A stretch of 64,000 nt of DNA from Paraphysomonas bandaiensis. Its lineage: Eukaryota > Protista > Chrysophyceae. Location: positions 1 through 64,000 of the forward strand of contig CBFFRP010000043.1 in NCBI GenBank assembly GCA_965644295.1, in the 5' to 3' direction. A program made the translations under genes and the position numbers. Shown here one piece after another: positions 2,372-24,093 of this stretch (position 1 is its first letter; every line of letters begins with the position of its first letter). Below the pieces are notes generated by a model. It had not been told where the DNA came from and did no database searches. It saw only the letters and a list, made by a program, of their open reading frames with translations.

Positions 2372-3184
2372 TCAACTATTCTCATTAGACAATGTGATTG
2401 TGTTATATAAACCCATTACTAATGATATGAATCTAACTATTGAACTTTTACCAACACCCATTGGCCCTTTCAAATAAATCATTGTTTTCATCTTATGTCC
2501 TTTTATAAGCTTTCTTATCCAGCTTTTGTCATACTTATAATTAACTTCATTCCCTGAATTCCACACTTCTTTAATGTGATTCCATATGAACTTCATTCCT
2601 TTTTTACCTCGCTCAATTTTCTTCATATCTTTCTTTGAGTTCTTATCGTATTTATATCCTGAAAACAAATTTAAGAAGTCGTCATCACCTTTAGAAAATA
2701 TCCTGGGTTTTGTGTTATCACATACTAAAGTATGTTTATCAGAGTATTTATTAAACCATGCTTTAATATGATCGGGAAAGTACTTTCCAAATGTGTTTAT
2801 AAAATTAGTTTGTGAATACTCATATGGTAGTATATGACCATCTGGGTTTTTTGTTAATACGTAAAACATACTATCGTAACCATGGAATATATTTTGTTTA
2901 ATGTAAGTTGTTGACTTAGGGAAAACTTTTTCATAATCTTCTGTTTCTAGTTTCTTAATTATATCTGTTCTTATTGTGTTTTCATTTATTCTTATCTTTG
3001 TATTTAACGTTCCTACAGTTTCAGAGACTTTCTTATTTATATATGTTTCATAATTATCAACTTCTTCTTTATATAATCTTTTAAGTTCTTTGTCTTTGTA
3101 AAGTTGTAAATATTTACCTATAAATTGCTCCTTCTCTTCTTTTGTAATCTTTTCACCATTGATCTCAGATTTTGTTTTTGTCAT
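2372..3184 (-). pseudogene. Truncated SF3/D5-like helicase of virophage / Polinton-like virus type
   Basis: Intronless, very AT-rich, Lys-rich ORF. Contains FLNLFSG...HIKEVWNSGNEVNYKY..SW and Walker A LKGPMGVGKS, the pattern of D5/SF3 helicases. Stops about 25 aa after Walker A (no Walker B), where composition returns to host-like. Confidence 0.75.
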
Positions 3185-3324
3185 AACTATATATATTATA
3201 TATATATAATTATTTTTTTAAATGATTTTATATATTAAAAAATGTTTTATATATTTTTATAAAATTGTGAAATTAAGGGTTTTTATATAAATCAAGGTTT
3301 TTATATAAAAATTGGGACGTTTTT

Positions 3325-3423
3325 GCTTTAAGCATATTCGCCATTATATCACTACAACTACATTCCAGAGCTTTAAGCATATTCGCCATTATATCACTAC
3401 AACTACATTCCAGAGCTTTAAGC
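3325..3423. repeat. 45-bp tandem repeat, 2 exact copies plus a partial third
   Basis: gctttaagcatattcgccattatatcactacaactacattccaga at 3325 and 3370; partial copy at 3415. Confidence 0.95.
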
Positions 3424-3454
3424 TTTGCCATTATACATTATTATAAAAAAGTCA

Positions 3455-3607
3455 TATAGATAACAAAGTAGATTTAATAAGTAGTTTTAATGGTAGAATC
3501 CCGGGGTTTTACAACCTTTACAAATTTAAATTATTTTTCATTTTAATTTTTCCCTCCCCCTATATCTACTATTAAATCTACTTATTAAATCTACTTTACT
3601 ATCTATA
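3455..3607. repeat. 30-bp inverted repeat with ~93-bp spacer
   Basis: tatagataacaaagtagatttaataagtag (3455-3484) vs ctacttattaaatctactttactatctata (3578-3607); 28/30 complementary. Confidence 0.9.
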
Positions 3608-4566
3608 TTACTTTTTATTATAAACATTATAAATAATATATAAAGTTATTAATTTTATTTAAGAATATAAATAATATATAAAGTAATTAAAAGTTATTAA
3701 TAATATATAAAGTAATTAAAAATATATAAAGTTAAATTAGCAAAGAGAAGGAATTACAACTGCAAGCTTGCAGTTGTAATTGGAAACACTCGAAGAGAAG
3801 AGCCCCTTGAGGGGTTGGGGTAGAAAAAGGCTTGTCCTTGTCCCGCCTCCCTCGTTTTTTCTATCGGATACGCAACCACCGAACCTCATAGGACACTGGT
3901 GGACGTATGACTCCGCTGGTATAGCTAGCTCCCACCATTCATTCACACCTCATCAGAGCTACCACTCGCTACCATGTTATAATTGGACAATATATATCAC
4001 ATCATATTGCAGAACTCAATATACACTAAACAAGTAACTTTGCTGTTTGCTATTAGCTTATATCATGTATTATCTTTGAAGAAGTTATGTATACGGTGTT
4101 GTTGCTGTATAAACAGCAGTCACTGACCTGATCAGACAACAAGCAAACTATTGGCTGCTACTCAGAGCCTTTGTTAAAAGGATAAATGTTCCCATCAATC
4201 ATTGACTATCTCTGAAATAACAAAACCATTTCAATTCAGTACAGTGGTTAACTTCACTAAAGCCATTTTACAATCTTAGACAGTAACTATAATTTCAACC
4301 AATCTAATTTATTTCATAATACTTCCTGAAACCCATATACGATGAAGTAATGATAACATACCCCACCATAAAAAACTATTTTCTAGTGCACCTTTCAATA
4401 TACATGCTAATGCAGAAAATCTCTATCCCAACAATATTTTCTTGTTTCAAGTTTTAGTCACTGGATTCTAGGAGATATGCACATACTGACCGTACCGTAT
4501 TCATGAGTTAACACTATTTATGAAAGATGAAACTTTGACCCTTTATATCAATCTATAGTCCGAACA

Positions 4567-6873
4567 CTACAACAGTACTTTGTCACATATACCAACCGCA
4601 TATGTCTTTCCCTTGGACCTCAGTGCAAATCGACCCAACGCTCTACATGAGGTAAATTCCTCTATGCACACATTGCACACCACTTCTATTTTCACACTGG
4701 CACTCCGGTCGCCAGGAACACATTTCGGTTTCTTGACCGTGCCCGACCGGGAAGTGAGGGAGAAAATTTTCCGTACGTGACATTGGACCTCCTCACCATG
4801 GAGATAGAGCTCGAACGAAGACCCAGGGATAATAGGTGGCACTAAAGGTGAAAGAGTCAGGATGGTGGCACGGAAGAGTCGACATGAGTGAGGGGAAGAT
4901 GGTCCCTTGTAGAGTACCATGCCTTCCTTCAATTTTATCTCCTCGTGAGACCGATTGGCCCTGTAAAAGCTGTCAGCACATGTTGAAGACGAAAATATTG
5001 TTATATCTCAAACCTGTCCAGAAGCAGCAGCGTTCCCGATTCTCCAGCGGGAAGTACATCCACGAAACTACCGTCATCTTTAGTAATTTTCTTAACATCA
5101 AATACCCCTTGAAGCAGAGCGATTCCAACCCCCCTACCCTTGCGCACCCGGCCCTGGAGTACTTTAACCCGTACCTATAGGGTACTATCACACCATTAGG
5201 TTGCCCTTCACATCTCCTTACCTCAAAACCTTTAGACCCTTCCGAAACAATAGTATTCAAAGCTGCACGCAAAGGTCGGTTAGATTCTCTCGGAGGCTCC
5301 TTAAAAGAATTGATCATCTCCAGCAGTGTCGGGCCAGTGTACCACTCTCTCAGTGCACTGTTACCGGGAGAAGAGCCCTTGCCTCCCATATCTCCAGGGA
5401 GAATGTTAACTCCTTCTAAACTACTGACGGGAACACACCGTACTGCTCGGGGACCAAACTGAAGCTCGCTGAGGAGCATCCGAATATCCGTCTACAATCA
5501 TTACCTTTAGGAATTGCAGCACAATCACATATATTACCTCTATTTGTTGGAACCGCTCCCGACACCATGGAGGGTTGGTCATGTCCATTTTATTAGCTAC
5601 CACAACCACTTGATTAACTCCCTGCAGTAGTTATTAAGTAACAAACCTAGCCATAATTGAATATACAATATCTCACCAGAGCTTTCAAGAGGACAGCATG
5701 CTCACGTGTTTGGGCGTTCTCTCCCATAGAGCTCTCGTACTCACCTGCGCTGGCGGGGACGACCAGCAGGGCTACATCAGCTTGTGTCGCCCCAGTGATT
5801 AGATTCGGTATAAAGTCCCTGTGTCCGGGGGCATCCAGGACGGTGAAATTGTAATTATCTGTACGCAGGTACCTTTCAGCAACTCCAATGGTGACCCCGT
5901 GGTCCCTTTCACTCTCGCTTTCGTCCATTACCCACGCCAGGTAGAAACTACTTTTCCCAGCTGCCTGGGCGCTTCGCTCATACTTGTGAATTGTGCGTGA
6001 AGAAACTGAACCCATCTGATACAACAGATTGCCAACTAAAGTACTCTTGCCTGCATCAACGTGACCGGCGACCACAAGTGCCAGATGAGGCAGCGTGCGC
6101 TCGGCTTCCTCTTCCTTGAGGTCACAATCTAACTCGTCGTCTGACAAAGCTGCCACACGGTTCAATTGACCACTAGAATTAGAAGTGGTCATTCCAGACC
6201 GCACCCCACTACCACTGCGGGAAAGAGGTGGAGCAGGAGAAGAGGACACAGACCGAGAGCCGCCTCCAGAACGAACGTTCGACACTTTTCTATGCAGCGG
6301 GGGTGTCGACGAACGCACAGCACCCACTGCAGAAGCTGGAGATGACTCCTGTGCGAGAGCGTTCTTGCGAGATTTGATGTGGTGCGATTTAGGGCTAGAC
6401 TTGTTGGACACAGGGGAGGAGACACCCAAGGGCGGTTTCTGTGTGGTATTCTGAGGCGATGGTAAAGCCGGAGGCTGTGAGAATCCAGGCGGTGCAGGTG
6501 CAGCAGATGCACCAGAGGTTAAAGCTAATCCTGGGGGGGCAGATTTACTTGGCGAAGGTTTGGCGTATTTATCACAAAGATACGTCATTGCGGCTGAAGT
6601 GTCCCCATTATGCATCATTAGCACACTGCACATATCCGCCTCAGACATCTCGTGTATGGACCCACCCATCACCTCTCTCACTAGATGAATAAACTCTTTC
6701 TCTGCATCAGTGGTTCGGAGTATAGATGAGCCAAGAAATTCCCCCATATTGATATGAGTCTGTCGTTTCTCAACAGAGTGAACTCTCTCATCGTAATCAT
6801 CATAATAGTCATCATCATCATAGTAGTCGTCATAGTCGTCATAGTCCTGAAGAGCAGTGCGATGTCGAGACAT
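4567..6873 (-). CDS. HBS1: HBS1-like translational GTPase (eRF3/EF1A family), about 5 exons
   Basis: N-terminus MSRHR...DYDD; G1 [29 protein letters not shown]; C-terminal [14 protein letters not shown]. ORFs 5647-6873, 5421-5609, 4973-5479 and 4567-4932 plus a short exon ([11 protein letters not shown]) join through GT-AG introns. Confidence 0.92.
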
Positions 6874-9745: not shown

Positions 9746-10048
9746 GGACACAATTTGTTTCTGTAATTACTACTGTTAAAATGCTGCTAAATATTTACCC
9801 CCTAAGGCTATTTGGTTGTCGCAGTTTCGAAGAAGCTGAAACCAATTCTACTTAGCCATCGCTGTCGGAACCCATTAGATTCATTATTTAGCGACAGTGA
9901 CTACGAATTTATAGATACCTCTCTGTACTTATTATTATCATCAATAAGTATCCTTACGCATTAGTGTGAACATATAGTTATATACATATGCTGGCACACA
10001 TCACCAAATAAACACACTTAACATATAAACTCTGCTCTGATAGGGCAG

Positions 10049-13000
10049 CTAGTCATCTAAATCATCGAAATAATAAACGCTCTGTTGAGTTGGATTCAGT
10101 GTTTGCCCCCATTGAACATCAAATGGGTCATCCCCAAATGAAGTTGGTAGCGATGTGGCACTATGAACGGACGCAATATCCCAGTCATCTACAGGGACAA
10201 TAGCAGATACATTGGATCTTGATCTCAAAGTTTGTTGCTTCTTCATACGCTTTGCTTTACGCAGCCTTTCCCTGTCAAGAGCTCTCTCCCGAACCATCTG
10301 TGTCCTGCACCTCTGGAACACCCCCTCTGGAAAATGATTTATACCTGGATTCTTGACCTCCTCGTGAGGGTAATCGGGGGTGACTTCAAGTCCACATAAA
10401 TCTACAATTTCAATATTAATTCACTACACTAAAATGTAAACACTGAGCACTACTCACAACAAAAGTCAGTGCGATCTCTAACGCAAGGTATGCCATCACT
10501 GCTCTTGTGGACCATATGATGGCAAGTATCAGGGTCATCCTTCTCTATTATTTTAGAGCACGATGGACATTTTTGAGCTCCAGCTATCTTCGTCCACTCT
10601 TCAAGCTGATCATCTACCGTTTCCGCTGAGCATCGCTGTCCATAGTGCCATGGTTTTTTACATCGAATACAGAAACGCTGAATACAATACGGACACTCGA
10701 CCATTGACACGCTACTGCTGGATGGGTAGTTAACAAAATTGTTGCAGAAAATGCATCTCATGCCTTCTCCGTACATAGAACGATCACAAAACTCGATAAA
10801 CTTATCATACTGCGTTTCAGTAAGCACTCTTTTGGCCACTTCCGCGTCAATGAGACCCACACAGTTTTCAAAATGTAGTGGACATTTCAGTGGAAACATA
10901 GACACATCTCCGAGTGCAGCAACGACATATCCCCTTAGATCATCGAGGCATATTTTGTGCTTGCACTTTAGTGACAAGACTTTCACCTCAGCGATATGAC
11001 ACACCATGCAATCACCGCGAAAAAGAAGTTTATTTTTAACTTCATCCATTTTGGGGGTATACTTAGGATACGGGCGCGGTGCTGCTCCCTCGTACTTCTT
11101 CTTCTTTTTACGCTTCATAGCTTCATTCAATATATTATGAATTAGGCATGTCAAACAACATAGCAAATACGTACATTTCTCGATTTTACTCATGGCCAGC
11201 GTGACGCACTTTGGCAGTCGGTTATACACAAACAACACAGTGAACATGACAATTGCAAATACTGTGATCACAGCCAGTGGTATAAAAAACTTCGTATAAA
11301 AGTCGTTGTCTTCTTTTTCGTCCTTTAAACTCTTAACTAAAATACAATTCACGATTAGAAGAACTTAAATTTAGACACATTTCACTCACTGTATTTTAAG
11401 CAGTCCTGTCCTTGGTCATCGCCATTCAACCAATACTGCATTTCTAAGCCAAAGTCTACATCATCGGGGATCATATTCTTTGTAGTGTTTGCATCTATAA
11501 TTATGGTTGCACGCCCACAAGGAATGTTTATTTTTATTTTTCTTGCCCTAACACGATTGATATCAAGAAGCACATGGTCGTAGCCATATAATCCCCCAAT
11601 CACACGAAGCCGGCCGGTGGTTTCCCCCTTGAACTCGAGAATCCGCAAAGTTATTGACTGCATAGTGTTTCCAGAATCAAGTGAGTACACACAAGTTTTT
11701 CCTGGCACGACAGGTTCTAAATTTTGGTTTGAGACGTCCGCGGAGTGTGATTTTCCCTCCCATTCTCCTCGAAGGCTTAATATACTACGTACGCTGTCGA
11801 GGGTGGTCAAAAAAGATGACGCAACCTGATTGCTCGCAATCGAAAATTTTGGGGAAACTAGAGTAGCTGGCACTGCTCCGTGCACAGTTCCACAAGTCAG
11901 GAGTTTATTCTCTGGTGGCCTTAGCGGTTGCTCCATTGATGCAACACGACCATCATTAGAAGCTACATCAGCCTCCACTGAATATGAGTACCAAGGATAA
12001 TAAGATAGAGCTGATATATCTGTTGATACACGCAGATTCCACGATGACGTGTTTCTGGCAGTATCGATGTCAGAACTAAAACTAAACGACGATGGGGATA
12101 GTAGCAGCATTGGATCGCTTGAGTCTCTCCAAAAAGGCTCAGTGATAGACCAGTAGCTAGCTTGAAACCCACTACCAATATGCTGGGAGTTTAGATCTAC
12201 TGGAGACTTGAATCGCACAAAAAGTGTGCTCGATGAGCTTACAATTCGATCTGGTAGCTCCGTGCAGTCTATACAGTACCACAAAAGAACAGCTGTGTCA
12301 TCTGAACCATCATAAATCCACATTTCTGCACCACCTCGTAAATCATTAGCTGTGAGTTCAAGAACCAACTTTCCTGGTGTAGTGGCATAGGCACTATAAA
12401 TGACCCATTCACAAGTATCTCCAATGTGCATCGGTTCCGCCGGCTCACTTCCATCAGAGAAATGCATTGAAGGGGCCGTGAGCTTTCCTGGATTTTTCGC
12501 AAGACCACAGTGATACGAATCACCTAAAGAGAAGTATGATACATCAATGAAACTATCGGTGTTCAAAATGGCAGTTTGGTTGGCTGGTTTTGTTGATATA
12601 AACTGCAAAACCGCTTCTCCAGAAGGAACCTCGACCCACTTTTCTAGAGCATACACATCACTAGTGTTATAAGCTTCTACACCAGTGCAGGTTATACTGG
12701 CAACCAGTGAGCTAGGCGACATGGACAGGCCCCCGCTGTATAGGTAAAGTGCATCAGAGCAGTCAACGATAGATACCATTGAAAATACGAAGTACAGCGC
12801 CCCATCGTGAATAGGATTTATATGCCACGTGTAGTTCGACACTACTGTAGTGCGAGTAGTAACACTTCGAGGAAGCTGAAGAGAATAATACGACGAGGAA
12901 TATAAGTTAATAACACCATCTCCAGGGCCAGTGTGAATGGAGGTGATAGCGTAGTACGCAACGGAGAAACCGTTTCCTACAGGTGCGCCGAATGGCGTGC

Positions 13001-14840
13001 GGTACACAACTCGCATACCTGTACTAGAACGGGAGTACACCGGCACCGGCACCGCAGTTGCGCTTGATATGTGCGTTAATTCAGGCGCAGAAGAACTGAC
13101 ACCGTCATACACAGTCACAGTACCACCACCATATATATCCAAGCGGTCAAAGTACAGAAATAAGCCTTCACTATTTGTCGGTTTTATAATCCATTCACAG
13201 TGTTGGTTCGAGTACATAGTCTCTGCACTGTAACTACCATCTGTAAACCTCATTGACGGGGCTGTGAGCTCGGCGGGATTTGTCGGAAATCCACAGTGAT
13301 AATTAGGGCCATCTGAATAGTAGGACAACTCAAAGCTTCCATTTCGGGAGGAGTCAGAATTTGATTGGAATTGAATTAACGCAACTCCAGATGTCGCAGT
13401 AACCCACTGCACTGGAACTGTAGTCCCACAAAACGTTCCAAGTAGAGGGGAAGTTTCCTTTTCACCGTCGTATATCCTCAATATATCACCGCAGTCTGTG
13501 ATGCTGAGCTTCGAGAAAAATATCACCAATGGACCCACAGCACTCATCGGCTTAAGCAGAAACGAGTACCTAAAGTTTTTTCGGTAACGGTGCACTGTTG
13601 AGGGAGATAGAGGAGAGCGATCAGGAAGGGTGATACCAATAGCTGACGACATAGAATAGAGCTCTTGGCTATCACCCATTCCACTGGTATCTTTGTGGCC
13701 TGAGAAGTAATCACCGCGAAATCCAAGAAAAGATGTGGCCAGTAAAGTGTTGGCAGTATAGGACACATAGAGACCCTTTCCAGAGGACACCAAAGGGGGA
13801 GGAACAATCGCAAAAGTACCCTCTGAATTCCATAACTGTACTCCATCAGGGCCATCAGAGTCATATACAATCACCTTTGCCCCAGGCTTGAGGCTAACCC
13901 AGCGCAACAAAAGGACCACCGGCCCTCCGCCGGTAGGAAGGATACGCCAGTTGCACGCCTCACCACGGCGCATAACGTTGCTAGACTTGCTTCCATCCAC
14001 AATAGACATAGAATTCGCAAGTAATACATCTGGGCTACTCTGCAATGAGCCACAGTGATACAAATCTTCATCGGCAATGTAATCAATCAAAAAATTCGCG
14101 TTTATTTCAACGCTACCAGTTACTAACACAATAAGAGCCCGTCCACTTGTAGAATATATCCACTTCTCAGGCTTCGATGCAGAGAAGCATCCCCCCCGAA
14201 ATAGGACAGGACTGCTCTCTGTAGGTCCATCATATATCGACAACGTTGCATTGCATCCTAACTCAAACTGAAATATAGCAAACACAAAACGAATCACATC
14301 AGCACTGACAGATATTGACCATTGCATCTTAGAATTTGCGGGCAAAGTCTTACCACCAATAAGTGGGGGTTGAATGTGACCGTAGCCCATGACATAATTA
14401 AGAAGAAAATTAGTGGAAGATGCATTGTACACTTGTCCTTGTGCTAAGTGTCCGACATACTGAAGATCAAAACTAGATGCAGAAAAGCTGGCCCCAACAA
14501 CACCATGTATTTGGATAGTTACTGATCCCGTGGATGAAGTAAACGCAGGAGGTATAAGACTACCACATGCCACACATGCGAAGATAGGGAGAGAGGTACC
14601 GGAGTCGTATATCTGTAACTGAGCTGTGCGGATATTTAAACTGCGGAATACAAAACTTACACGATCAAGCTGTAAAGGTGGCTGAATGATCCACTCCTCT
14701 TTATCAGACTGACTGTTGACTGCATAAGAAATACTTCCAACTACACTTTTCTTGATTTGTAGTGCATATGTCTGTATATTTATTAAGCTTATTATAGAGA
14801 GGTATAGCAGACTCATGAACAGCTGCATTATACTACACAT
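10049..14840 (-). CDS. Single-pass membrane protein: signal peptide, ~7-8 CUB domains, TM helix, RBR (RING1-IBR-RING2) E3 ubiquitin ligase; ~1560 aa
   Basis: Exons 14840-11390, 11336-10458 and 10401-10049; GT-AG introns of 53 and 56 nt both preserve frame. CUB motifs C.W.I.P, L.IYDG and GF...Y are repeated. TM FFIPLAVITVFAIVMFTVLFVY. IBR CPYCIQRFCIRCKKPWH. RING2 CPSC..IEK....TCHHM...FC|YLCG is completed by the last splice. Confidence 0.88.
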
Positions 14841-15380
14841 ATATCGTCATACAATAAGTACATATGATCGTACACGAATCATCCCACTGATCGAATCCGA
14901 ACAGTGATTATGGAATTCAATTACTCTCCATTGGACTCACTTTGTCTATGAAGTTGTTCTTCCTCACTTCGTCATAAGGAGACAGTACACTGAATATCTC
15001 ATCAAAGTTCCAACGTAATATTTCAATGACGACGACAAAAATCTGTCCATACCTCATGTTATGTGCTATATGTTGGGGCTTTTGTCAGACTAGAACACGA
15101 AATCCCGTTATTTTAGCCACTCTCGCTGCTGTGGTATACTGCTGTACACACTGCTGTGTACGTATTCCATATGGTTACAATATTTGGACAATCGTATCAT
15201 ACATATAGACATAGAATTCCTTTTGCTCTCGTAGTATCCGGGCGGATACTGCTGTATTATTGTACCACAGTTCTGGTGTACCCGACTGCTGCTGTGTGTG
15301 TTCATATCATGTGGCATCGCTACATAGATATGACTCAGAGTCACAGTACATAATGAACCGCTAAAACCACATAACGTTAA

Positions 15381-18300
15381 ATGAAATATTATATTCTTCT
15401 CCTAAGCCAATACGTTTCCTTGAGTGCTGGTGCCGGCTTTACGAGTCATAATGTGGCTGCCCGGAGAGCCTCACAGTTTGAGTATTTCGGACCCGAAACA
15501 AACGAGTTTAACCCTTCGTATTTTTATGGTCTAGCAGAGGATCGTTCCGATGCTATTCAAGGAGGTTCCCCATTTCCTGATTACTTGTATGCGTGTGGGA
15601 CAGAACATGATGCAGGTAACGATTAAGGCTGTGGAGACTGTATCTGAGGATGTCATCTGATAGGCGAAGAGGCTCATTGGACTCCTTTCCAAATTTATTC
15701 TGCTGAGTATATTCGCGATCAATATCCTACGTGGATGCTCGATGGCCGGGATAGTGACGGAGCTGGTCTTGTTGCCTTCATGATGGGGGTCACATCCCAT
15801 TACATAGCGGATATCAATTGGCATGGGCTTGAAGTCATACCGAGTGGCGAAGGCCTCATACGCACTATGGGATATGCTGACTTCAACTGTACAGATGGAG
15901 ACCTATGTTCAACTGCTCATTCCGCTGCCGATACTGGTGGCGAATTTGCTGCAGCCGCCTCACTGGACCTTTCTTGGTATCCACAGGTATTCTTAACGAT
16001 AAAAATGAGCAACCGTGTAAATATACGTCGGTCCGTTTTTAATTCAATGGCGGATAGTGTTGTATATTTATCAATAGTAATTGTACTCATACTATGCCAT
16101 TGCCTTTCAGAAAGATTGGTACTTGCCCACCGAAGATCTAGTTAATATATACGCCACGATGAATGCCTCTGGGGAGGGTCCATTAGTGGAGCCTGAATGG
16201 ATCAAAGCCTGTGGCGTAATATTTTATGCTGGTAAATGTTAATAATATATGTGTATATGTGTTGAGTGTATTTGTATCGATATATTTCTAACAATATATT
16301 TAATATGTTTTCAATTCACTGATGAATACCTTTCAGGCAGTTTCGGGGTATCTCGATTTGGTGACTTGATATACCCTCTCCTTGCACCCTTTCTTGGCGG
16401 GCTTCTTCTTGAGGATTACTTTGAGTTTCCTGTTGGAGGGGTGGACGATGATGCGGCGTGGACTAGTTTTATGTGGAATCGGTTTGCTGATTGGTTGATT
16501 TATGGACCACCTCCACCAGACCCTCCCCCTAATTATGTGGATGACACAAGCCGAGATACCCAGAAGAAAAGAATGAGGGAAGGAATACTTCTTGGAAAAC
16601 GTCAGTGGGTGAGTGCAATGAGGGATATTATAAAAGATGTGTACAACTCGGAGAACGAATTTCAATATAGCGGCGGCGGTTTGTTTGAAGTTTATAATAG
16701 TCGTGACCAAATGGGGCTCCACGGGACATCTAAGGGATCCTTCATTGGGTTACGACGAAACCACACCTTAGATGACTTGATGATAAAGAAAGATACCAAA
16801 CTTTTATATTTACTCGCGAACTCATTGATTGATAATTATCTTGCTGTTGTGTTTCCTGAGATTCTAACCCATTCAGCGTCTACACTGAATAACGTTCGGC
16901 ACAAATTGAAAGACAGAGCACATGAACTTGCCCAGTCTCTTCGATCGCCTTCTTTTGCTGATGGTATACGAGGCGACATGCACCATGGAAGTTTTACTAG
17001 TGATATCGATGGAATAGGCTTCGCTTCGGGGAGCAGCGAGCATGAGTATTTCGCACGGTCTTTATCAGCTTCATCTGATGGATCATTTATGGTTGGGTCT
17101 CCAGGTTCGGGTCGTATCGGTGGACCACAAGAAGGTACAGCTAAACTATTTTTTCATAACACGAACAGTACAGCACGAAAGAACTCGAATGATGTATTTT
17201 CTGATCCTATTATATTCTATGGTGGGCGCGGAGGTGGACGAACAGATGCTTTTCCGACTTACGAACGATTTGGGTGGTCTTCAGCTGCCTGTGATATGAA
17301 TGGCGACGAAATAGACGACTGGATCATATGTGCTCCATCCCATAATGGAGGGCGTGATACAGATGCTGCGCGGGGAAACTACACTGGGCGATGTGATATA
17401 TTTTATGCACCTTTTAGGGACGATCCGGTACCAGATGCGAGTGTGTACGGGGACAAGGAGTGGGGAAACTTTGGGTACAATGTATTATGTGGAGATGTGG
17501 ACGGTGATGGACACAAAGATGTAGTAATAGCCGCTCCTTTTGTCGGAAGGTATGTTATGTTAGTTTTTGTATGTGGAAGTGCTATATAGTAACCTGTCCC
17601 TTCGACATTATTCTAAATTTGGAATACTTATGTTTAGTTATCCGGGTATTTCTGCTAATGATCGTGGGGATTTGTCCTCTCAAGGTGCTGTGTACGTATA
17701 TATGGCTTCGAATTTCGAAAAGACATTCTTGTCACCCAGTAGTGTCATGGAAAAGTCATTAGCAGCCTCCTCTGCTGATGTTGTGATTCAGCCTGACGAA
17801 TCGTTTCAGTGGTTTGGGAAGAGTTTGGCGTCGTCCCCTCGTGATTCCATTCATAATCTGTTTGTCGTGGGGGCCCCATCCTACCATTCTGCAGTAAAGG
17901 GAGAGGAGAATAGTGCTGTGGGACGTGTCTACGTCTACCCTTCCCTCTCCTCTTCATCTACATCAGTAGATTACTTGTTTACTGTAACAGGTTGTGGACA
18001 CTCTGGTCGAACAGGGCATGCCGTAGCGCTGTCATCCACACACCTTGCCTTCTCTGAAACACACTGGAATGGTACTACTTCCGATGATACAGTCCGACCA
18101 CGGGATACACTTTTAAGGGCTGGACGCGTGTTTGTGGTACCGCTGAATTCTGTGGTAGTAAATAAATTGACACAGTCCCCAGTTGACTATCGGGCGTGTG
18201 ACTTAGCTACAGTTGACGGAGTCATTCAGGTGTCGGGCGATACCTATGAGGGTCGATTTGGGTCATCCATTTCGTTTGATTCTACCGGATCAACTCTCTT

Positions 18301-20624: not shown

Positions 20625-22402
20625 ATGGAGACACAAGCCCAGCCCCGTCGACCTAGCTTTAAGCCCCCTCCTCCTCCCACTGCAGGTGCAGGTGATTCAT
20701 ACATATAGACACATGTATACCCCTCGATAATTGTCTCATACGATACTCGTGTTGTTTTAGAGCGAACTATGAGCAGTGAAAATACATCAAGCACAAGAGA
20801 CTCTGAAAATGTGAGTATATGTTATGCTGTGTATATTTGAGAGCAGACATCACTCTTTTTATGTGTTAATGATAAACAGGACGTGAAAACATCGACTTCA
20901 GCATCACAAACATCCGCGAAAGGGTTCGGCCGTCGAGTGTCAGCTTTTTTTGCCAAATTGTTTTCAGAGGACGAGGAGCCCGCACCGATGGAAATAGGAA
21001 CTCCTTATAATTTTCAGCACATCCAACATGTTAAAGCTGACCCTCACACGTCCACAGGATTTGCTGTACGTAGATTTTGATTTGTATAATGTACGATCAT
21101 CACGCTTTAATGGTTTTAGGGGTTACCGGAGCCAATGCGTGTTGTACTGAAAGCCTCTGGGATATCGAAAGAGGAAAGCACTGCCCATCCTCAAGCCGTA
21201 CTCGACGTGCTCAACTTCCACATGGAGGGCGGACCCGCCGGTGATGTAAAAGCTGTCACGGCGGCACCATTACCCAAAACCGCGGAGGTTAATCGCGACA
21301 TTACGAAGGCTGCCATGATTAAACGGGAGAATTACACCCCACTTTTCACCGATCTCAAAAAATTGGGTCAAGGCGCTTCAGGAATTGTATATTCTGCTAC
21401 ACGAGTATCAAGCGGCGAGAAAGTTGCACTAAAGGTTGCGCCAATAAACGAACTCGCAGACCTTACCAATGAAATGGGCTTACAATCGATGTGTCGCCAT
21501 CAGAATATCGTCGAGTTCCAGGAAGCCTTTGTGCATGGTAGTGACGTTTGCATAGTGATGGAGTTGGTACCCGGCTCATCACTCACTAACTGCCTCGGGA
21601 CGCGAGTGGATTTCCCGGAGCCATGTATCGCGTACGTTTGTCGAGAGGTTCTTCGCGGGCTCCAGTTGATGCATTCTCTACACAGGCTTCATAGAGATAT
21701 CAAGAGTGATAATGTTCTGGTAAATTTCGTGCAACATCTTTACTCTATACCATATATAAGAATATCAAGTCCTGTTCTTTCGTTCGTCGATTTTATTTGA
21801 GTTATGTGTAGGTGGGGTATAATGGGGATGTGAAAATTGCTGATTTCGGGTTTGCTGCCAATTTAACGCGGGAGCAGTCCAAGAGGAGCTCTGTTGTGGG
21901 AACACCTTACTGGATGGCGCCAGAGTTGATCCGGGGTATGAGCTATGATGATAAGGTAACTTGCATGGTACTGATAGTTGATGTTCGCATTAGTTAGACA
22001 TTATTATCGTAAGGTCTGATTAAACCAATTCATACCTCGTTTCGTGGTGAATGCACAATTTTATAATGCGACCTTCCGTAGGTGGACATCTGGAGTCTGG
22101 GAATTACACTTATTGAAATGACTGATGGAGAACCACCACTCCTTCGTGAACCTCCTTTGCGTGCCTTGTTGTTGATTACAATTAATGATCCACCCACAGT
22201 GAAAGACCCGTCTAAGTGGTCGCGCGGTCTGCAACACTTCCTGTCCAACTGCCTTGTAGTGAACCCGACCGCTAGGGCATCCGCAGAGCAGTTACTCTCC
22301 CATCCGTTCATCGCATCAGCGTGTTCGCAGGAGGAGTTTGCGCTCTACGTCAATTCCAGGCTAAAGAAGAAGAAGAAGCCTGCAGCGACAGCGGGAAAAT
22401 GA
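20625..22402 (+). CDS. PAK/STE20-family Ser/Thr kinase with CRIB domain, multi-exon
   Basis: [18 protein letters not shown]; kinase [37 protein letters not shown]. The 5' exons and start are inferred. Confidence 0.9.
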
Positions 22403-23250: not shown

Positions 23251-24093
23251 TTATATAGCAATATTTCTTGACGACCACGGCAACTCGCCCTTCATATCTT
23301 GCTGCCTCATATACTCGTACCCTGATTCCATCATCTCATATATTACTTGTCTCTCCATGATCTGAAAAGCAGGAGCCATTTTCCGCTTCCTTGTGCGCTC
23401 TCGGCATACTTCATCTTTCCTCCAGTCTACCCAATATACTTCTCTCTCATCCTGCACGTACTGCGGCAGAGGGAGTCTCTTGACTGATCGGGTAACGAAG
23501 TGCCAAAATGATCCATCAATCGCTACCTCACCTCTATATTCGGTCATTAGTCGACCGTCAAGAAAAAGAGGAATGTGTATAGATGCCATACACGCATTGA
23601 TAATGTCGTCTTTGTCTGAAAAGTTAGAAATCAATTTCGCTTGTGCGGAGTTTATAGGTGTTATAGTGAGATAAAGGTGAGATATTTCTTGAGGTGATAA
23701 CGTGTCAGGTATTTGTTTATGCAGCCAATCCCTAATCAATGGACCCCATATACCAGCAAGTCCAATCTTCCTCTCATACAAGTTTAGTTGTTCAGCGACG
23801 GCCAGTGATTCATCAGTTGAAGAGCGGAAATCGGCATTCAGTTTCAGCAGAGTGGCAGCAATGGAGCCTGCACTGGCTCCCACAATAGGAACGTTGTGTA
23901 GATCACAGTATTCTTTCAAGTAGAGAGCAGCCCCTGCAAACCAGTAGTAGTAGTTTCCCCCTCCAGTGAAGTATAGCGCAGTTGGCGTTGACGAGGAGTC
24001 TCTTCGGAGTAGAGTGGAAAGAGATCTCTCTCTGGTCCCACAGATAGCAGGCTTACATCTATTGCAGAGTGAGGGAGCTCTATTGGCTATCAT
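23251..24093 (-). CDS. Patatin-like phospholipase (PNPLA-like)
   Basis: Oxyanion FTGGG, nucleophile GASAG, MASIHIP and a DGS (DGx) motif. Confidence 0.88.
   Translation of the reverse strand: MIANRAPSLCNRCKPAICGTRERSLSTLLRRDSSSTPTALYFTGGGNYYYWFAGAALYLKEYCDLHNVPIVGASAGSIAATLLKLNADFRSSTDESLAVAEQLNLYERKIGLAGIWGPLIRDWLHKQIPDTLSPQEISHLYLTITPINSAQAKLISNFSDKDDIINACMASIHIPLFLDGRLMTEYRGEVAIDGSFWHFVTRSVKRLPLPQYVQDEREVYWVDWRKDEVCRERTRKRKMAPAFQIMERQVIYEMMESGYEYMRQQDMKGELPWSSRNIAI

What the first reader, a model, noticed from the sequence alone, without database searches (positions are those of the whole stretch)
10049..14840. Receptor-type RBR E3 ligase: multi-CUB ectodomain, TM helix and RING-IBR-RING in one polypeptide
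Seen: three ORFs join through two canonical introns (11337-11389 and 10402-10457) without a frame change. The second splice rebuilds the RING2 FCYLCG motif, and the RING2 catalytic-position Cys (TCHHM, compare GCNHM) is intact. Established: animal RNF43/ZNRF3 are single-pass ligases with a simple RING, and the CUB proteins Attractin/MEGF8 recruit the separate RING ligase MGRN1. Membrane RBRs such as RNF19 and RNF144 have the TM after the RBR and no large ectodomain. Inference: this is a ligand- or substrate-sensing surface ubiquitin ligase, an architecture I do not recognise as described.
Basis: partly seen in the sequence, partly recalled or inferred. Interest (0 to 1): 0.85.

Follow-up and report, generated by a model that had tools for sequence, protein, structure and literature searches.

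The report
Membrane RBR ubiquitin ligase with CUB ectodomain
A real, expressed four-exon gene of the chrysophyte flagellate Paraphysomonas joins a cubilin-like row of CUB domains, one membrane helix and a complete RING1-IBR-RING2 ubiquitin ligase in one protein; this layout is conserved across ochrophyte algae but has no described counterpart.

Summary
The gene lies on the minus strand at 14840-10049.

RNA confirms the gene model. Contigs from two culture runs and one polyA marine metatranscriptome carry all three splices. One 4895-nt contig spans all four exons, and a DNA-like run is unspliced. An MMETSP Paraphysomonas transcript protein matches the spliced 1542-aa model except for one residue.

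The protein has these parts:
- a signal peptide;
- seven sequence-related CUB domains plus two further beta domains (Pfam CUB 8e-24; Foldseek best match cubilin CUB5-8, 1.2e-24);
- one TM helix followed by a poly-Lys stretch;
- a confidently modelled RBR (pLDDT 92) whose top structural matches are all RBRs (Parkin, HOIL-1, HOIP, RNF216, HHARI). By profile it is closest to ARIH1 (2.3e-22), and the catalytic Cys1404 is intact.

The architecture is single-copy in this genome. It recurs in at least 45 protein clusters from chrysophytes, a pelagophyte, a dictyochophyte and a raphidophyte, all labelled hypothetical. No paper in the searched library describes it.

Shown: architecture, transcription, conservation. 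Inferred: catalytic activity, cell-surface location and ligand sensing.

Verdict: a new variant of known kinds (transmembrane E3 ligases and RBRs), of moderately high interest.

The parts
10049..14840 (-). Whole coding region. It has four exons: 14840-11390, 11336-11175, 11120-10458 and 10401-10049 (stop codon included). The product is 1542 aa.
   Evidence: The spliced model was built and translated and matches transcript protein P0001 except at one residue. A single 4895-nt contig of run X1 covers all exons and runs past both ends of the stretch laid, 10000-14900.
14763..14840 (-). Signal peptide, about aa 1-26. It has a hydrophobic core and is followed by ..TYA|LQ.
   Evidence: Kyte-Doolittle peak of 2.0 at aa 2-22. 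An N-terminal hydrophobic segment is present in most full-length homologues scanned. The AF2 model has an N-terminal helix at 2-20.
12141..14759 (-). Seven tandem CUB-type beta-sandwich domains (aa 28-900). After domain 1 they alternate between two subtypes: d2/d4/d6 and d3/d5/d7.
   Evidence: Pfam CUB 8e-24. The AF2 model is all-beta with pLDDT 75.7. Foldseek finds cubilin CUB5-8 at 1.2e-24, then neuropilins, enteropeptidase, PCPE-1, MASP/C1r/C1s and the TSG-6 CUB. Internal BLAST gives d5-d7 8e-26, d3-d7 1e-15 and d2-d4 7e-9.
11427..12041 (-). Two membrane-proximal beta domains (aa 934-1026 and 1044-1138) with no sequence similarity to d1-d7.
   Evidence: AF2 strands in these ranges. No Pfam hit and no significant internal BLAST hit. 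The fold was not classified.
11337..11389 (-). Intron 1: 53 nt, GTGAGT..TAG, phase 1.
   Evidence: Sequence. The joint 11336>11390 is seen in X1, X4 and X6 and not in X18.
11224..11289 (-). Single transmembrane helix (aa 1167-1188).
   Evidence: Kyte-Doolittle peak of 2.79. A TM helix sits at the same relative position, 50-70 aa before RING1, in every full-length homologue scanned.
11121..11174 (-). Intron 2: 54 nt, GTACGT..AAG, in frame and without a stop codon.
   Evidence: Transcript protein P0001 lacks these 18 codons. The joint 11120>11175 is seen in X1, X4 and X6 and not in X18.
11023..11115 (-). Cytosolic juxtamembrane segment: a poly-Lys stretch (aa 1207-1213) and the conserved PYPKYTPxxDxxxN element (aa 1221-1237).
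   Evidence: The positive-inside charge is read directly from the sequence. Y, T, P, D and N are invariant in the three-sequence alignments A1/A2. The model has a helix at residues 14-22 with high pLDDT.
10861..11010 (-). RING1 (aa 1242-1291), the presumed E2-binding domain.
   Evidence: Profile A5 aligns it to ARIH1 RING1. C, C, C, H and C are invariant in A5. The sixth ligand position is Asp here and Cys or Asp in relatives.
10630..10755 (-). IBR / BRcat (aa 1327-1368), with the C6HC pattern.
   Evidence: Pfam IBR 3.4e-9, above its cut-off. It aligns to the HOIP and ARIH1 IBR domains.
10331..10569 (-). RING2 / Rcat (aa 1389-1449), interrupted by intron 3 at 10402-10457.
   Evidence: It aligns to ARIH1 RING2. 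The splice joint 10401>10458 is seen in X1, X4 and X6. The TDFCYxCG...HFPxGVFxxC tail is conserved.
10522..10524 (-). Codon of the predicted catalytic Cys1404 (..DPDT-C-HHM..).
   Evidence: It aligns with the Cys of ARIH1 ..GG-C-NHMV... It is invariant in A5 and present in 45 of 46 long family members.
10402..10457 (-). Intron 3: 56 nt, GTGAGT..TAG, phase 1.
   Evidence: Sequence and RNA joints. Metagenomic homologue P0015 carries an unspliced insertion at the same position.
10226..10324 (-). Long basic helix after RING2 (aa 1452-1484).
   Evidence: The AF2 model has a helix at 245-270 with pLDDT above 90.
10109..10129 (-). Acidic-aromatic tail motif DPFDVQW (consensus DxFDxQW).
   Evidence: Found by regex in 26 of 46 long family members. 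Its function is unknown.

Best explanation
The gene encodes a type I membrane protein that is an RBR-class ubiquitin ligase.

Shown: a cleavable signal peptide and about 1140 residues of tandem CUB-type domains lie on the extracytosolic side. One TM helix followed by a poly-Lys stretch puts the C-terminal 350 residues in the cytosol. That part is a complete RING1-IBR-RING2 module with all features needed for catalysis.

Inferred mechanism: RING1 recruits a ubiquitin-charged E2. Ubiquitin passes as a thioester to Cys1404 of RING2, and from there to lysines of the ligase's own tail or of neighbouring membrane proteins. This marks them for endocytosis or sorting. The CUB array resembles the ligand-binding arrays of cubilin and neuropilin. 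It would select what is bound on the outside, so binding or clustering would be coupled directly to ubiquitination on the inside.

The family is an ochrophyte invention, built on a stramenopile RBR subtype that otherwise occurs as small soluble proteins.
For: - Gene model and transcription: all three splices appear in RNA contigs of three runs, one contig spans everything, and a DNA-like run is unspliced. The model is identical to an MMETSP transcript protein apart from one residue.
- Ectodomain: Pfam CUB 8e-24. The AF2 model is all-beta. Foldseek finds cubilin at 1.2e-24 and other CUB receptors. Internal repeats are clear. There are 8 N-x-S/T sequons, and Cys positions are conserved across homologues.
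- Topology: a signal peptide plus a single TM helix 50-70 aa before RING1 is seen in full-length homologues. Positive charge follows the TM helix.
- RBR: the AF2 model has pLDDT 92.3. All top PDB fold matches are RBRs with probability 1.0. The family profile matches ARIH1 across RING1-IBR-RING2 at 2.3e-22, then ARIH2, HOIL-1, RNF216, HOIP and CUL9. The catalytic Cys is invariant.
- Conservation: 45 clusters of full-length proteins, nearly all with both CUB and IBR Pfam hits, and 16 of 16 in a direct scan. Named members come from Chrysophyceae, Pelagophyceae, Dictyochophyceae and Raphidophyceae.
- The RBR mechanism itself (RING1 binds the E2, a thioester forms on the Rcat Cys) is established knowledge (PMC3940038).
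Against: - No biochemical or localisation data exist.
- RING1 of this protein has Asp where the sixth zinc ligand is normally Cys. Relatives have Cys or Asp at this position.
- RING2 has His where ARIH1 has the Cys that follows the NHM motif.
- No known RBR regulatory module is present (Ariadne domain, RING0, UBL), so how activity would be gated is unknown.
- The ectodomain could face the lumen of an organelle rather than the outside of the cell.
- The ligand is unknown. The odd-numbered CUB domains, read by eye, lack the Asp motifs of calcium-binding CUBs.
Confidence: 0.62

Rival explanations
1. Same protein and same chemistry, but it works inside the endomembrane system. The CUB array faces the lumen of the ER, Golgi, endosomes, food vacuoles or the silica-deposition pathway. 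The ligase would then serve cargo sorting or quality control, like the endosomal PA-TM-RING ligases, rather than sensing at the cell surface.
For: A signal peptide plus one TM helix fits any compartment of the secretory pathway equally well. PA-TM-RING ligases such as RNF13 are endosomal, and RNF133 is in the ER (PMC4021871). No plasma-membrane targeting signal was identified.
Against: Large tandem CUB arrays in solved structures are mostly extracellular ligand binders: cubilin, neuropilin, complement proteases. Nothing here tells the two locations apart.
Confidence: 0.28
2. The RBR is a non-catalytic remnant. It serves as a zinc-finger scaffold or an E2/ubiquitin-binding module on the tail of an adhesion or endocytic receptor.
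For: There are non-canonical zinc ligands: Asp in RING1 and His in RING2. The single-sequence match to solved RBRs is weak.
Against: The catalytic Cys and its C-x-H-M context are kept in 45 of 46 members across four algal classes. The RBR is the most conserved part of the protein, at 45-65% identity against 35-57% for the ectodomain. Asp and His are both competent zinc ligands. The model is very confident.
Confidence: 0.07
3. This is a gene-model artefact: a secreted CUB protein ending at the stop at 11382 and a separate membrane RBR gene lie next to each other.
For: The unspliced DNA has in-frame stops at 11382 and 10450. ORF callers on metagenomic contigs report exon 1 alone as proteins of 1100-1190 aa.
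Against: Spliced contigs bridge both junctions in three runs, among them a polyA metatranscriptome. The MMETSP transcript protein is continuous. Forty-five full-length clusters carry both halves.
Confidence: 0.01

Closest known systems
Ariadne RBR ligases (ARIH1/HHARI, ARIH2/TRIAD1)
   Same: They are the closest solved relatives of the catalytic module. The family profile matches ARIH1 at 2.3e-22 across RING1, IBR and RING2, and ARIH2 at 2e-19. The EKxxGC-x-HM catalytic loop is the same.
   Different: There is no Ariadne domain, no acidic or UBA-like N-terminus and no link to cullins. The protein is membrane-anchored with a huge ectodomain. RING2 has His in place of one Cys ligand, plus an extra conserved HFPxGVFxxC tail.
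Membrane-associated animal RBRs: RNF19A/B, RNF144A/B, RNF217
   Same: They have RBR chemistry tethered to a membrane (PMC4021871). RNF217 clusters are among the structural neighbours in the ESM Atlas.
   Different: Here the order is signal peptide, ectodomain, TM, RBR.
PA-TM-RING ligases (GRAIL/RNF128, RNF13, RNF130, RNF167) and RNF43/ZNRF3
   Same: They share the overall logic and topology: signal peptide, extracytosolic protein-binding domain, single TM helix, cytosolic E3 domain (PMC4021871). This is the best functional analogy.
   Different: Their ectodomain is a single PA-type domain of about 150 aa, not roughly nine beta domains. Their E3 domain is a simple RING-H2 that acts as an E2 adaptor, not an RBR with its own catalytic cysteine.
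Cubilin and other multi-CUB receptors (neuropilins, complement C1r/C1s/MASP)
   Same: They have tandem CUB arrays. Cubilin CUB5-8 is the top structural match at 1.2e-24.
   Different: From general knowledge, cubilin has no TM helix or cytosolic domain and relies on amnionless. None of these proteins carries a ubiquitin ligase.
Small soluble stramenopile RBRs with the same RING2 tail (e.g. Mucochytrium quahogii A0A7S2S2E0)
   Same: They share the TDFCYxCG...HFPxGxFxxC RING2 variant, at 24-33% identity over the RBR.
   Different: They are 290-450 aa. Most have no hydrophobic segment, and a motif-based check found no CUB-family members among them. They look like the parent RBR type onto which the CUB-TM part was fused.

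Membership tests
RBR (RING1-IBR-RING2) E3 ligases | N-terminal RING1 of the C3HC4 cross-brace type | tested here: met
   Profile A5 aligns to ARIH1 RING1. C-x2-C...C-x-H-x2-C is invariant. The fold matches RBR structures. Caveat: ligand 6 is Asp in this protein and Cys or Asp in relatives.
RBR (RING1-IBR-RING2) E3 ligases | Central IBR/BRcat with the C6HC pattern | tested here: met
   Pfam IBR scores 3.4e-9 (37.1 bits against a cut-off of 24.3). The pattern C-x2-C-x16-C-x2-C-x4-C-x2-C-x4-H-x4-C can be read in the sequence.
RBR (RING1-IBR-RING2) E3 ligases | RING2/Rcat with a conserved catalytic cysteine | tested here: met
   Cys1404 aligns with the Cys of ARIH1 GGCNHMV. It is invariant in A5 and present in 45 of 46 members.
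RBR (RING1-IBR-RING2) E3 ligases | Forms an E3~ubiquitin thioester and ubiquitinates substrates | not testable with these tools
   This needs biochemistry.
Ariadne subfamily | C-terminal Ariadne (autoinhibitory) domain after the RBR | tested here: not met
   Only about 90 residues follow RING2: one helix and an acidic tail. Pfam finds no further domain.
RNF19/RNF144/RNF217-type membrane RBRs | Hydrophobic anchor C-terminal to the RBR and no ectodomain | tested here: not met
   The only TM helix (aa 1167-1188) lies before RING1, and no hydrophobic segment follows the RBR.
PA-TM-RING / RNF43-ZNRF3 receptor-type RING ligases | Signal peptide, ectodomain, single TM helix, cytosolic E3 domain | tested here: met
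   Hydropathy and charge distribution fit, and they are conserved in homologues.
PA-TM-RING / RNF43-ZNRF3 receptor-type RING ligases | PA-type ectodomain and a single RING-H2 finger | tested here: not met
   The ectodomain is a CUB array and the E3 module is an RBR.
CUB domain superfamily | Match to the CUB profile and the jelly-roll beta-sandwich fold | tested here: met
   Pfam CUB scores 8e-24 (84.5 bits against a cut-off of 21.4). Foldseek matches cubilin, neuropilin, MASP and the TSG-6 CUB (TM by target 0.79).
CUB domain superfamily | Ca2+-binding Glu/Asp/Asp triad of ligand-binding CUBs | tested here: inconclusive
   Read by eye only. Domain 4 keeps C-G-D...Y-D-G and S-D-S-S-x-x-G-S-F, while the odd-numbered domains lack both Asp motifs. 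No structural superposition was done.

The most novel reading that the evidence does not exclude
A true 'receptor ubiquitin ligase'. Ligand binding or clustering of the CUB ectodomain, for example on prey or particle surfaces in these largely phagotrophic or mixotrophic flagellates, would directly switch on the cytosolic RBR across the membrane. This would be the ubiquitin counterpart of a receptor kinase. It would drive self- and neighbour-ubiquitination that triggers uptake. It would also be an RBR activation mechanism unlike any known one (phospho-ubiquitin, neddylated cullins, allosteric ubiquitin).
Probability: 0.15. Interest if true: 0.85.

Novelty: new variant of a known kind. Interest (0 to 1): 0.6.

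Why it matters
RBR ligases are known as soluble or tail-anchored enzymes that are kept off by intramolecular locks. Known receptor-type ligases use simple RING fingers.

A conserved family that wires a large extracellular-type ligand-binding array directly to an RBR would add a new way of passing information across a membrane into the ubiquitin system. It would also offer a natural test case for RBR activation by clustering.

Ecologically, the carriers are abundant marine and freshwater bacterivores and mixotrophs, and the gene is seen in polyA ocean metatranscriptomes. A role in recognising or internalising food or signals would bear on how these grazers work.

For annotation, ORF-based gene calls on metagenomes split this gene at its short introns and hide the architecture.

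Tried and rejected
- A single-sequence search of the cytosolic part against PDB sequences gave only marginal hits (HOIP IBR 0.01, HHARI RING2 0.4). A family profile was needed.
- The ESM Atlas feature search with the whole protein gave no usable hit. This says nothing about novelty.
- The own-genome search found no paralogue of either half. Two other long IBR-containing ORFs, on contigs C236 and C291, were checked as possible further receptor-type RBRs. They turned out to be helicase-RBR proteins (Helicase_C/OB/RRM/KH_DEAH11; Helicase_C/PARP/WWE).
- Neighbouring ORFs show no obvious functional link: an EF-Tu-like GTPase, an FG-GAP repeat protein, a kinase and a patatin.
- Literature searches for CUB with RBR or IBR, and for CUB domains in chrysophytes or stramenopiles, found nothing relevant. 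The one RBR mention in a diatom paper concerns a different gene. The Eisenhaber 2007 RBR classification paper is not held.
- No complex-prediction job was sent, because no specific binding partner is claimed.
Full report
**1. What is in the sequence**

On the minus strand, three long ORFs (14840-11382, 11352-10450 and 10321-10049) lie head to tail. Read on the minus strand, 11389-11337 is 53 nt and 10457-10402 is 56 nt. Both begin GTGAGT and end TAG. Joining across them keeps one reading frame. It produces ..CLKY-I-KSLKDE.. at the first junction and ..TDFC-Y-LCGLEV.. at the second.

**2. Transcript evidence**

A protein search with exon 1 found a 1519-aa protein from the MMETSP1103 transcriptome of Paraphysomonas (Chrysophyceae, taxid 36769) at 100% identity. 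It runs without a break from the CUB part into the RBR and shows both junctions.

This intron is in frame and free of stops. Where the ORF reading gives 19 residues, the transcript has one Ser.

With all three introns removed the CDS is 1542 aa. It differs from the transcript protein only by a Val/Ala change in the TM helix and by the transcript's incomplete ends.

Laying public runs on 10000-14900 gave independent support:
- All three joints (CT..AC on the plus strand) occur in two culture-derived runs and in a polyA marine metatranscriptome.
- One 4895-nt contig covers all four exons.
- A near-identical DNA-like run has the stretch unspliced in one piece.

An in-frame stop at 14849-14847 closes the frame just upstream of the first ATG.

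**3. Anatomy of the protein**

*N-terminus.* There is a hydrophobic signal sequence.

*Ectodomain.* Pfam finds CUB at 8e-24. An AF2 model built from 15 homologues (pLDDT 75.7) is all-beta, with about nine sandwich domains. Foldseek matches cubilin CUB5-8 (1.2e-24), neuropilins, enteropeptidase, PCPE-1, MASP/C1r/C1s and the TSG-6 CUB. Internal BLAST shows domains 1-7 are related and fall into two alternating subtypes, d3/d5/d7 and d2/d4/d6. The last two domains are unclassified. Eight N-glycosylation sequons and Cys positions conserved across homologues fit a secretory-pathway location.

*Membrane anchor.* A single strong TM helix (aa 1167-1188) is followed by a poly-Lys stretch. This places the C-terminus in the cytosol.

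*Cytosolic part.* A conserved juxtamembrane element comes first, then RING1, IBR and RING2, then a long basic helix and an acidic tail. Its AF2 model is very confident (pLDDT 92.3). Its top PDB neighbours are all RBR ligases: Parkin, HOIL-1, HOIP, RNF216, HHARI and ARIH2, all at probability 1.0. Atlas neighbours are RBR clusters too. A family profile matches ARIH1 across all three zinc domains at 2.3e-22. Cys1404 aligns with the Cys in ARIH1's GGCNHMV loop.

*Two departures from the canon.* The sixth RING1 ligand is Asp here and Cys or Asp in relatives. RING2 has His where ARIH1 has the next Cys, together with a family-specific TDFCYxCG...HFPxGVFxxC tail.

**4. Conservation and distribution**

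The gene is single-copy in its 62.6-Mb assembly, which holds some 15-18 other IBR loci.

A profile search of 1.84 billion representatives gave 67 hits below 1e-30. Among them were at least 14 full-length proteins of about 1475-1916 aa with the RBR at the same C-terminal position. A word-based search restricted to the RBR listed 45 clusters of long proteins, nearly all with both CUB and IBR. A direct Pfam scan gave 16 of 16.

Every full-length member scanned has the TM helix 50-70 residues before RING1, and most show the N-terminal signal. The catalytic Cys is present in 45 of 46.

Named members are:
- Ochromonadaceae sp. CCMP2298;
- 'Chrysophyte H1';
- Epipyxis sp.;
- Chlorochromonas (Ochromonas) danica;
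- Pelagophyceae sp. CCMP2097;
- Florenciella parvula;
- Heterosigma akashiwo.

This covers four ochrophyte classes. All copies are labelled hypothetical or unnamed.

The nearest RBRs without CUB are small, mostly soluble proteins. One is from the labyrinthulomycete Mucochytrium. This suggests a fusion of a CUB-TM module onto a stramenopile RBR subtype.

Intron positions are shared. Many metagenomic ORF calls stop at the end of exon 1, and one homologue carries an unspliced insert at the RING2 intron site.

**5. How it most likely works**

Shown: the architecture, its expression, its conservation and the intact catalytic signature.

Established for RBRs in general: RING1 binds E2~Ub, and ubiquitin passes to the Rcat cysteine and then to substrate (PMC3940038).

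Inferred for this protein:
- It is active.
- Its substrates are its own tail or nearby membrane proteins.
- The CUB array supplies extracytosolic binding specificity.
- The outcome is endocytosis or sorting.

Whether the ectodomain faces the outside or an organelle lumen cannot be told from sequence. How the RBR is gated is open, since no known inhibitory module is present.

**6. Comparison with what is known**

The catalytic core is closest to the Ariadne proteins, but the protein fails the Ariadne membership test because it has no Ariadne domain.

It is not of the RNF19/RNF144/RNF217 type, because the TM helix lies before the RBR rather than after it.

Its topology and logic match PA-TM-RING and RNF43/ZNRF3 ligases. 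A review singles these out as the only human TM RING proteins with an extracytosolic domain (PMC4021871). Both the ectodomain type and the E3 class differ here.

No paper in the searchable library joins CUB with IBR or RBR, or reports CUB proteins of this kind in chrysophytes.

I therefore rate it a new variant of known kinds. It is real, conserved and uncharacterised, but assembled from familiar parts in a lineage where new domain combinations are common.

**7. Operators' notes**

Reads were laid on 4901 letters, under the 6000-letter limit.

The two earlier notes returned for this window concern other places and did not bear on this report. One is a virophage-like remnant at 2372-3738. The other is a GTPase/TIR fusion at 52115-55306.

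Noticed in passing
window 14841-14882 (minus strand): Three short upstream ATGs sit in the 5' leader within 45 nt of the main start, at 14882, 14863 and 14850. Each opens a tiny uORF. The one at 14882 is in frame with the CDS and ends at the stop at 14849-14847. The transcript contig reaches at least 73 nt beyond 14900.
   Followed up: partly
window 11121-11174: The 54-nt intron is in frame and has no stop, so retaining it would insert 18 residues (Cys- and Leu-rich) just after the TM helix. Only the spliced form was seen in RNA contigs, but contigs drop rare variants. The DNA-like run X18 differs from the window by two adjacent bases inside this intron (11167-11168).
   Followed up: partly
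window 11249, 12444, 13491, 13815, 14490: The RNA runs and the DNA-like run share five single-base differences from the window. One of them (11249 A>G) gives the Val/Ala difference in the TM helix. This points to strain or allele variation rather than editing.
   Followed up: partly
window 10109-10129: An acidic-aromatic tail motif, DxFDxQW, recurs in 26 of 46 long family members at variable distance from the C-terminus. It loosely recalls DPF/FxDxF-type endocytic adaptor motifs, from memory and untested.
   Followed up: partly
window 10930-10945 (RING1): The sixth zinc-ligand position of RING1 alternates between Asp and Cys across the family, roughly 29 Asp to 16 Cys in 46 sequences. This is consistent with Asp acting as a ligand.
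   Followed up: partly
L004 4390-8907 (G000:C236) and L005 3706-8682 (G000:C291): Two other very long IBR-bearing ORFs of the same genome are helicase-RBR proteins. One has Helicase_C, OB_NTP_bind, RRM and DEAH11-type KH domains. The other has Helicase_C, a PARP catalytic domain and WWE domains.
   Followed up: partly
window 16249-17589 (+), 5647-6873 (-), 21135-21800 (+), 23251-24093 (-): The neighbouring ORFs carry FG-GAP repeat, EF-Tu-like GTPase, protein kinase and patatin domains respectively. No evident link to the ligase gene.
   Followed up: no
P0016-P0027: The ectodomain also hits bacterial (Bacteroidota-type) multi-domain proteins at 23-27% identity. These combine CUB with metallopeptidase domains and a T9SS sorting tail (PF18962). 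The origin of the ochrophyte CUB array was not examined.
   Followed up: no
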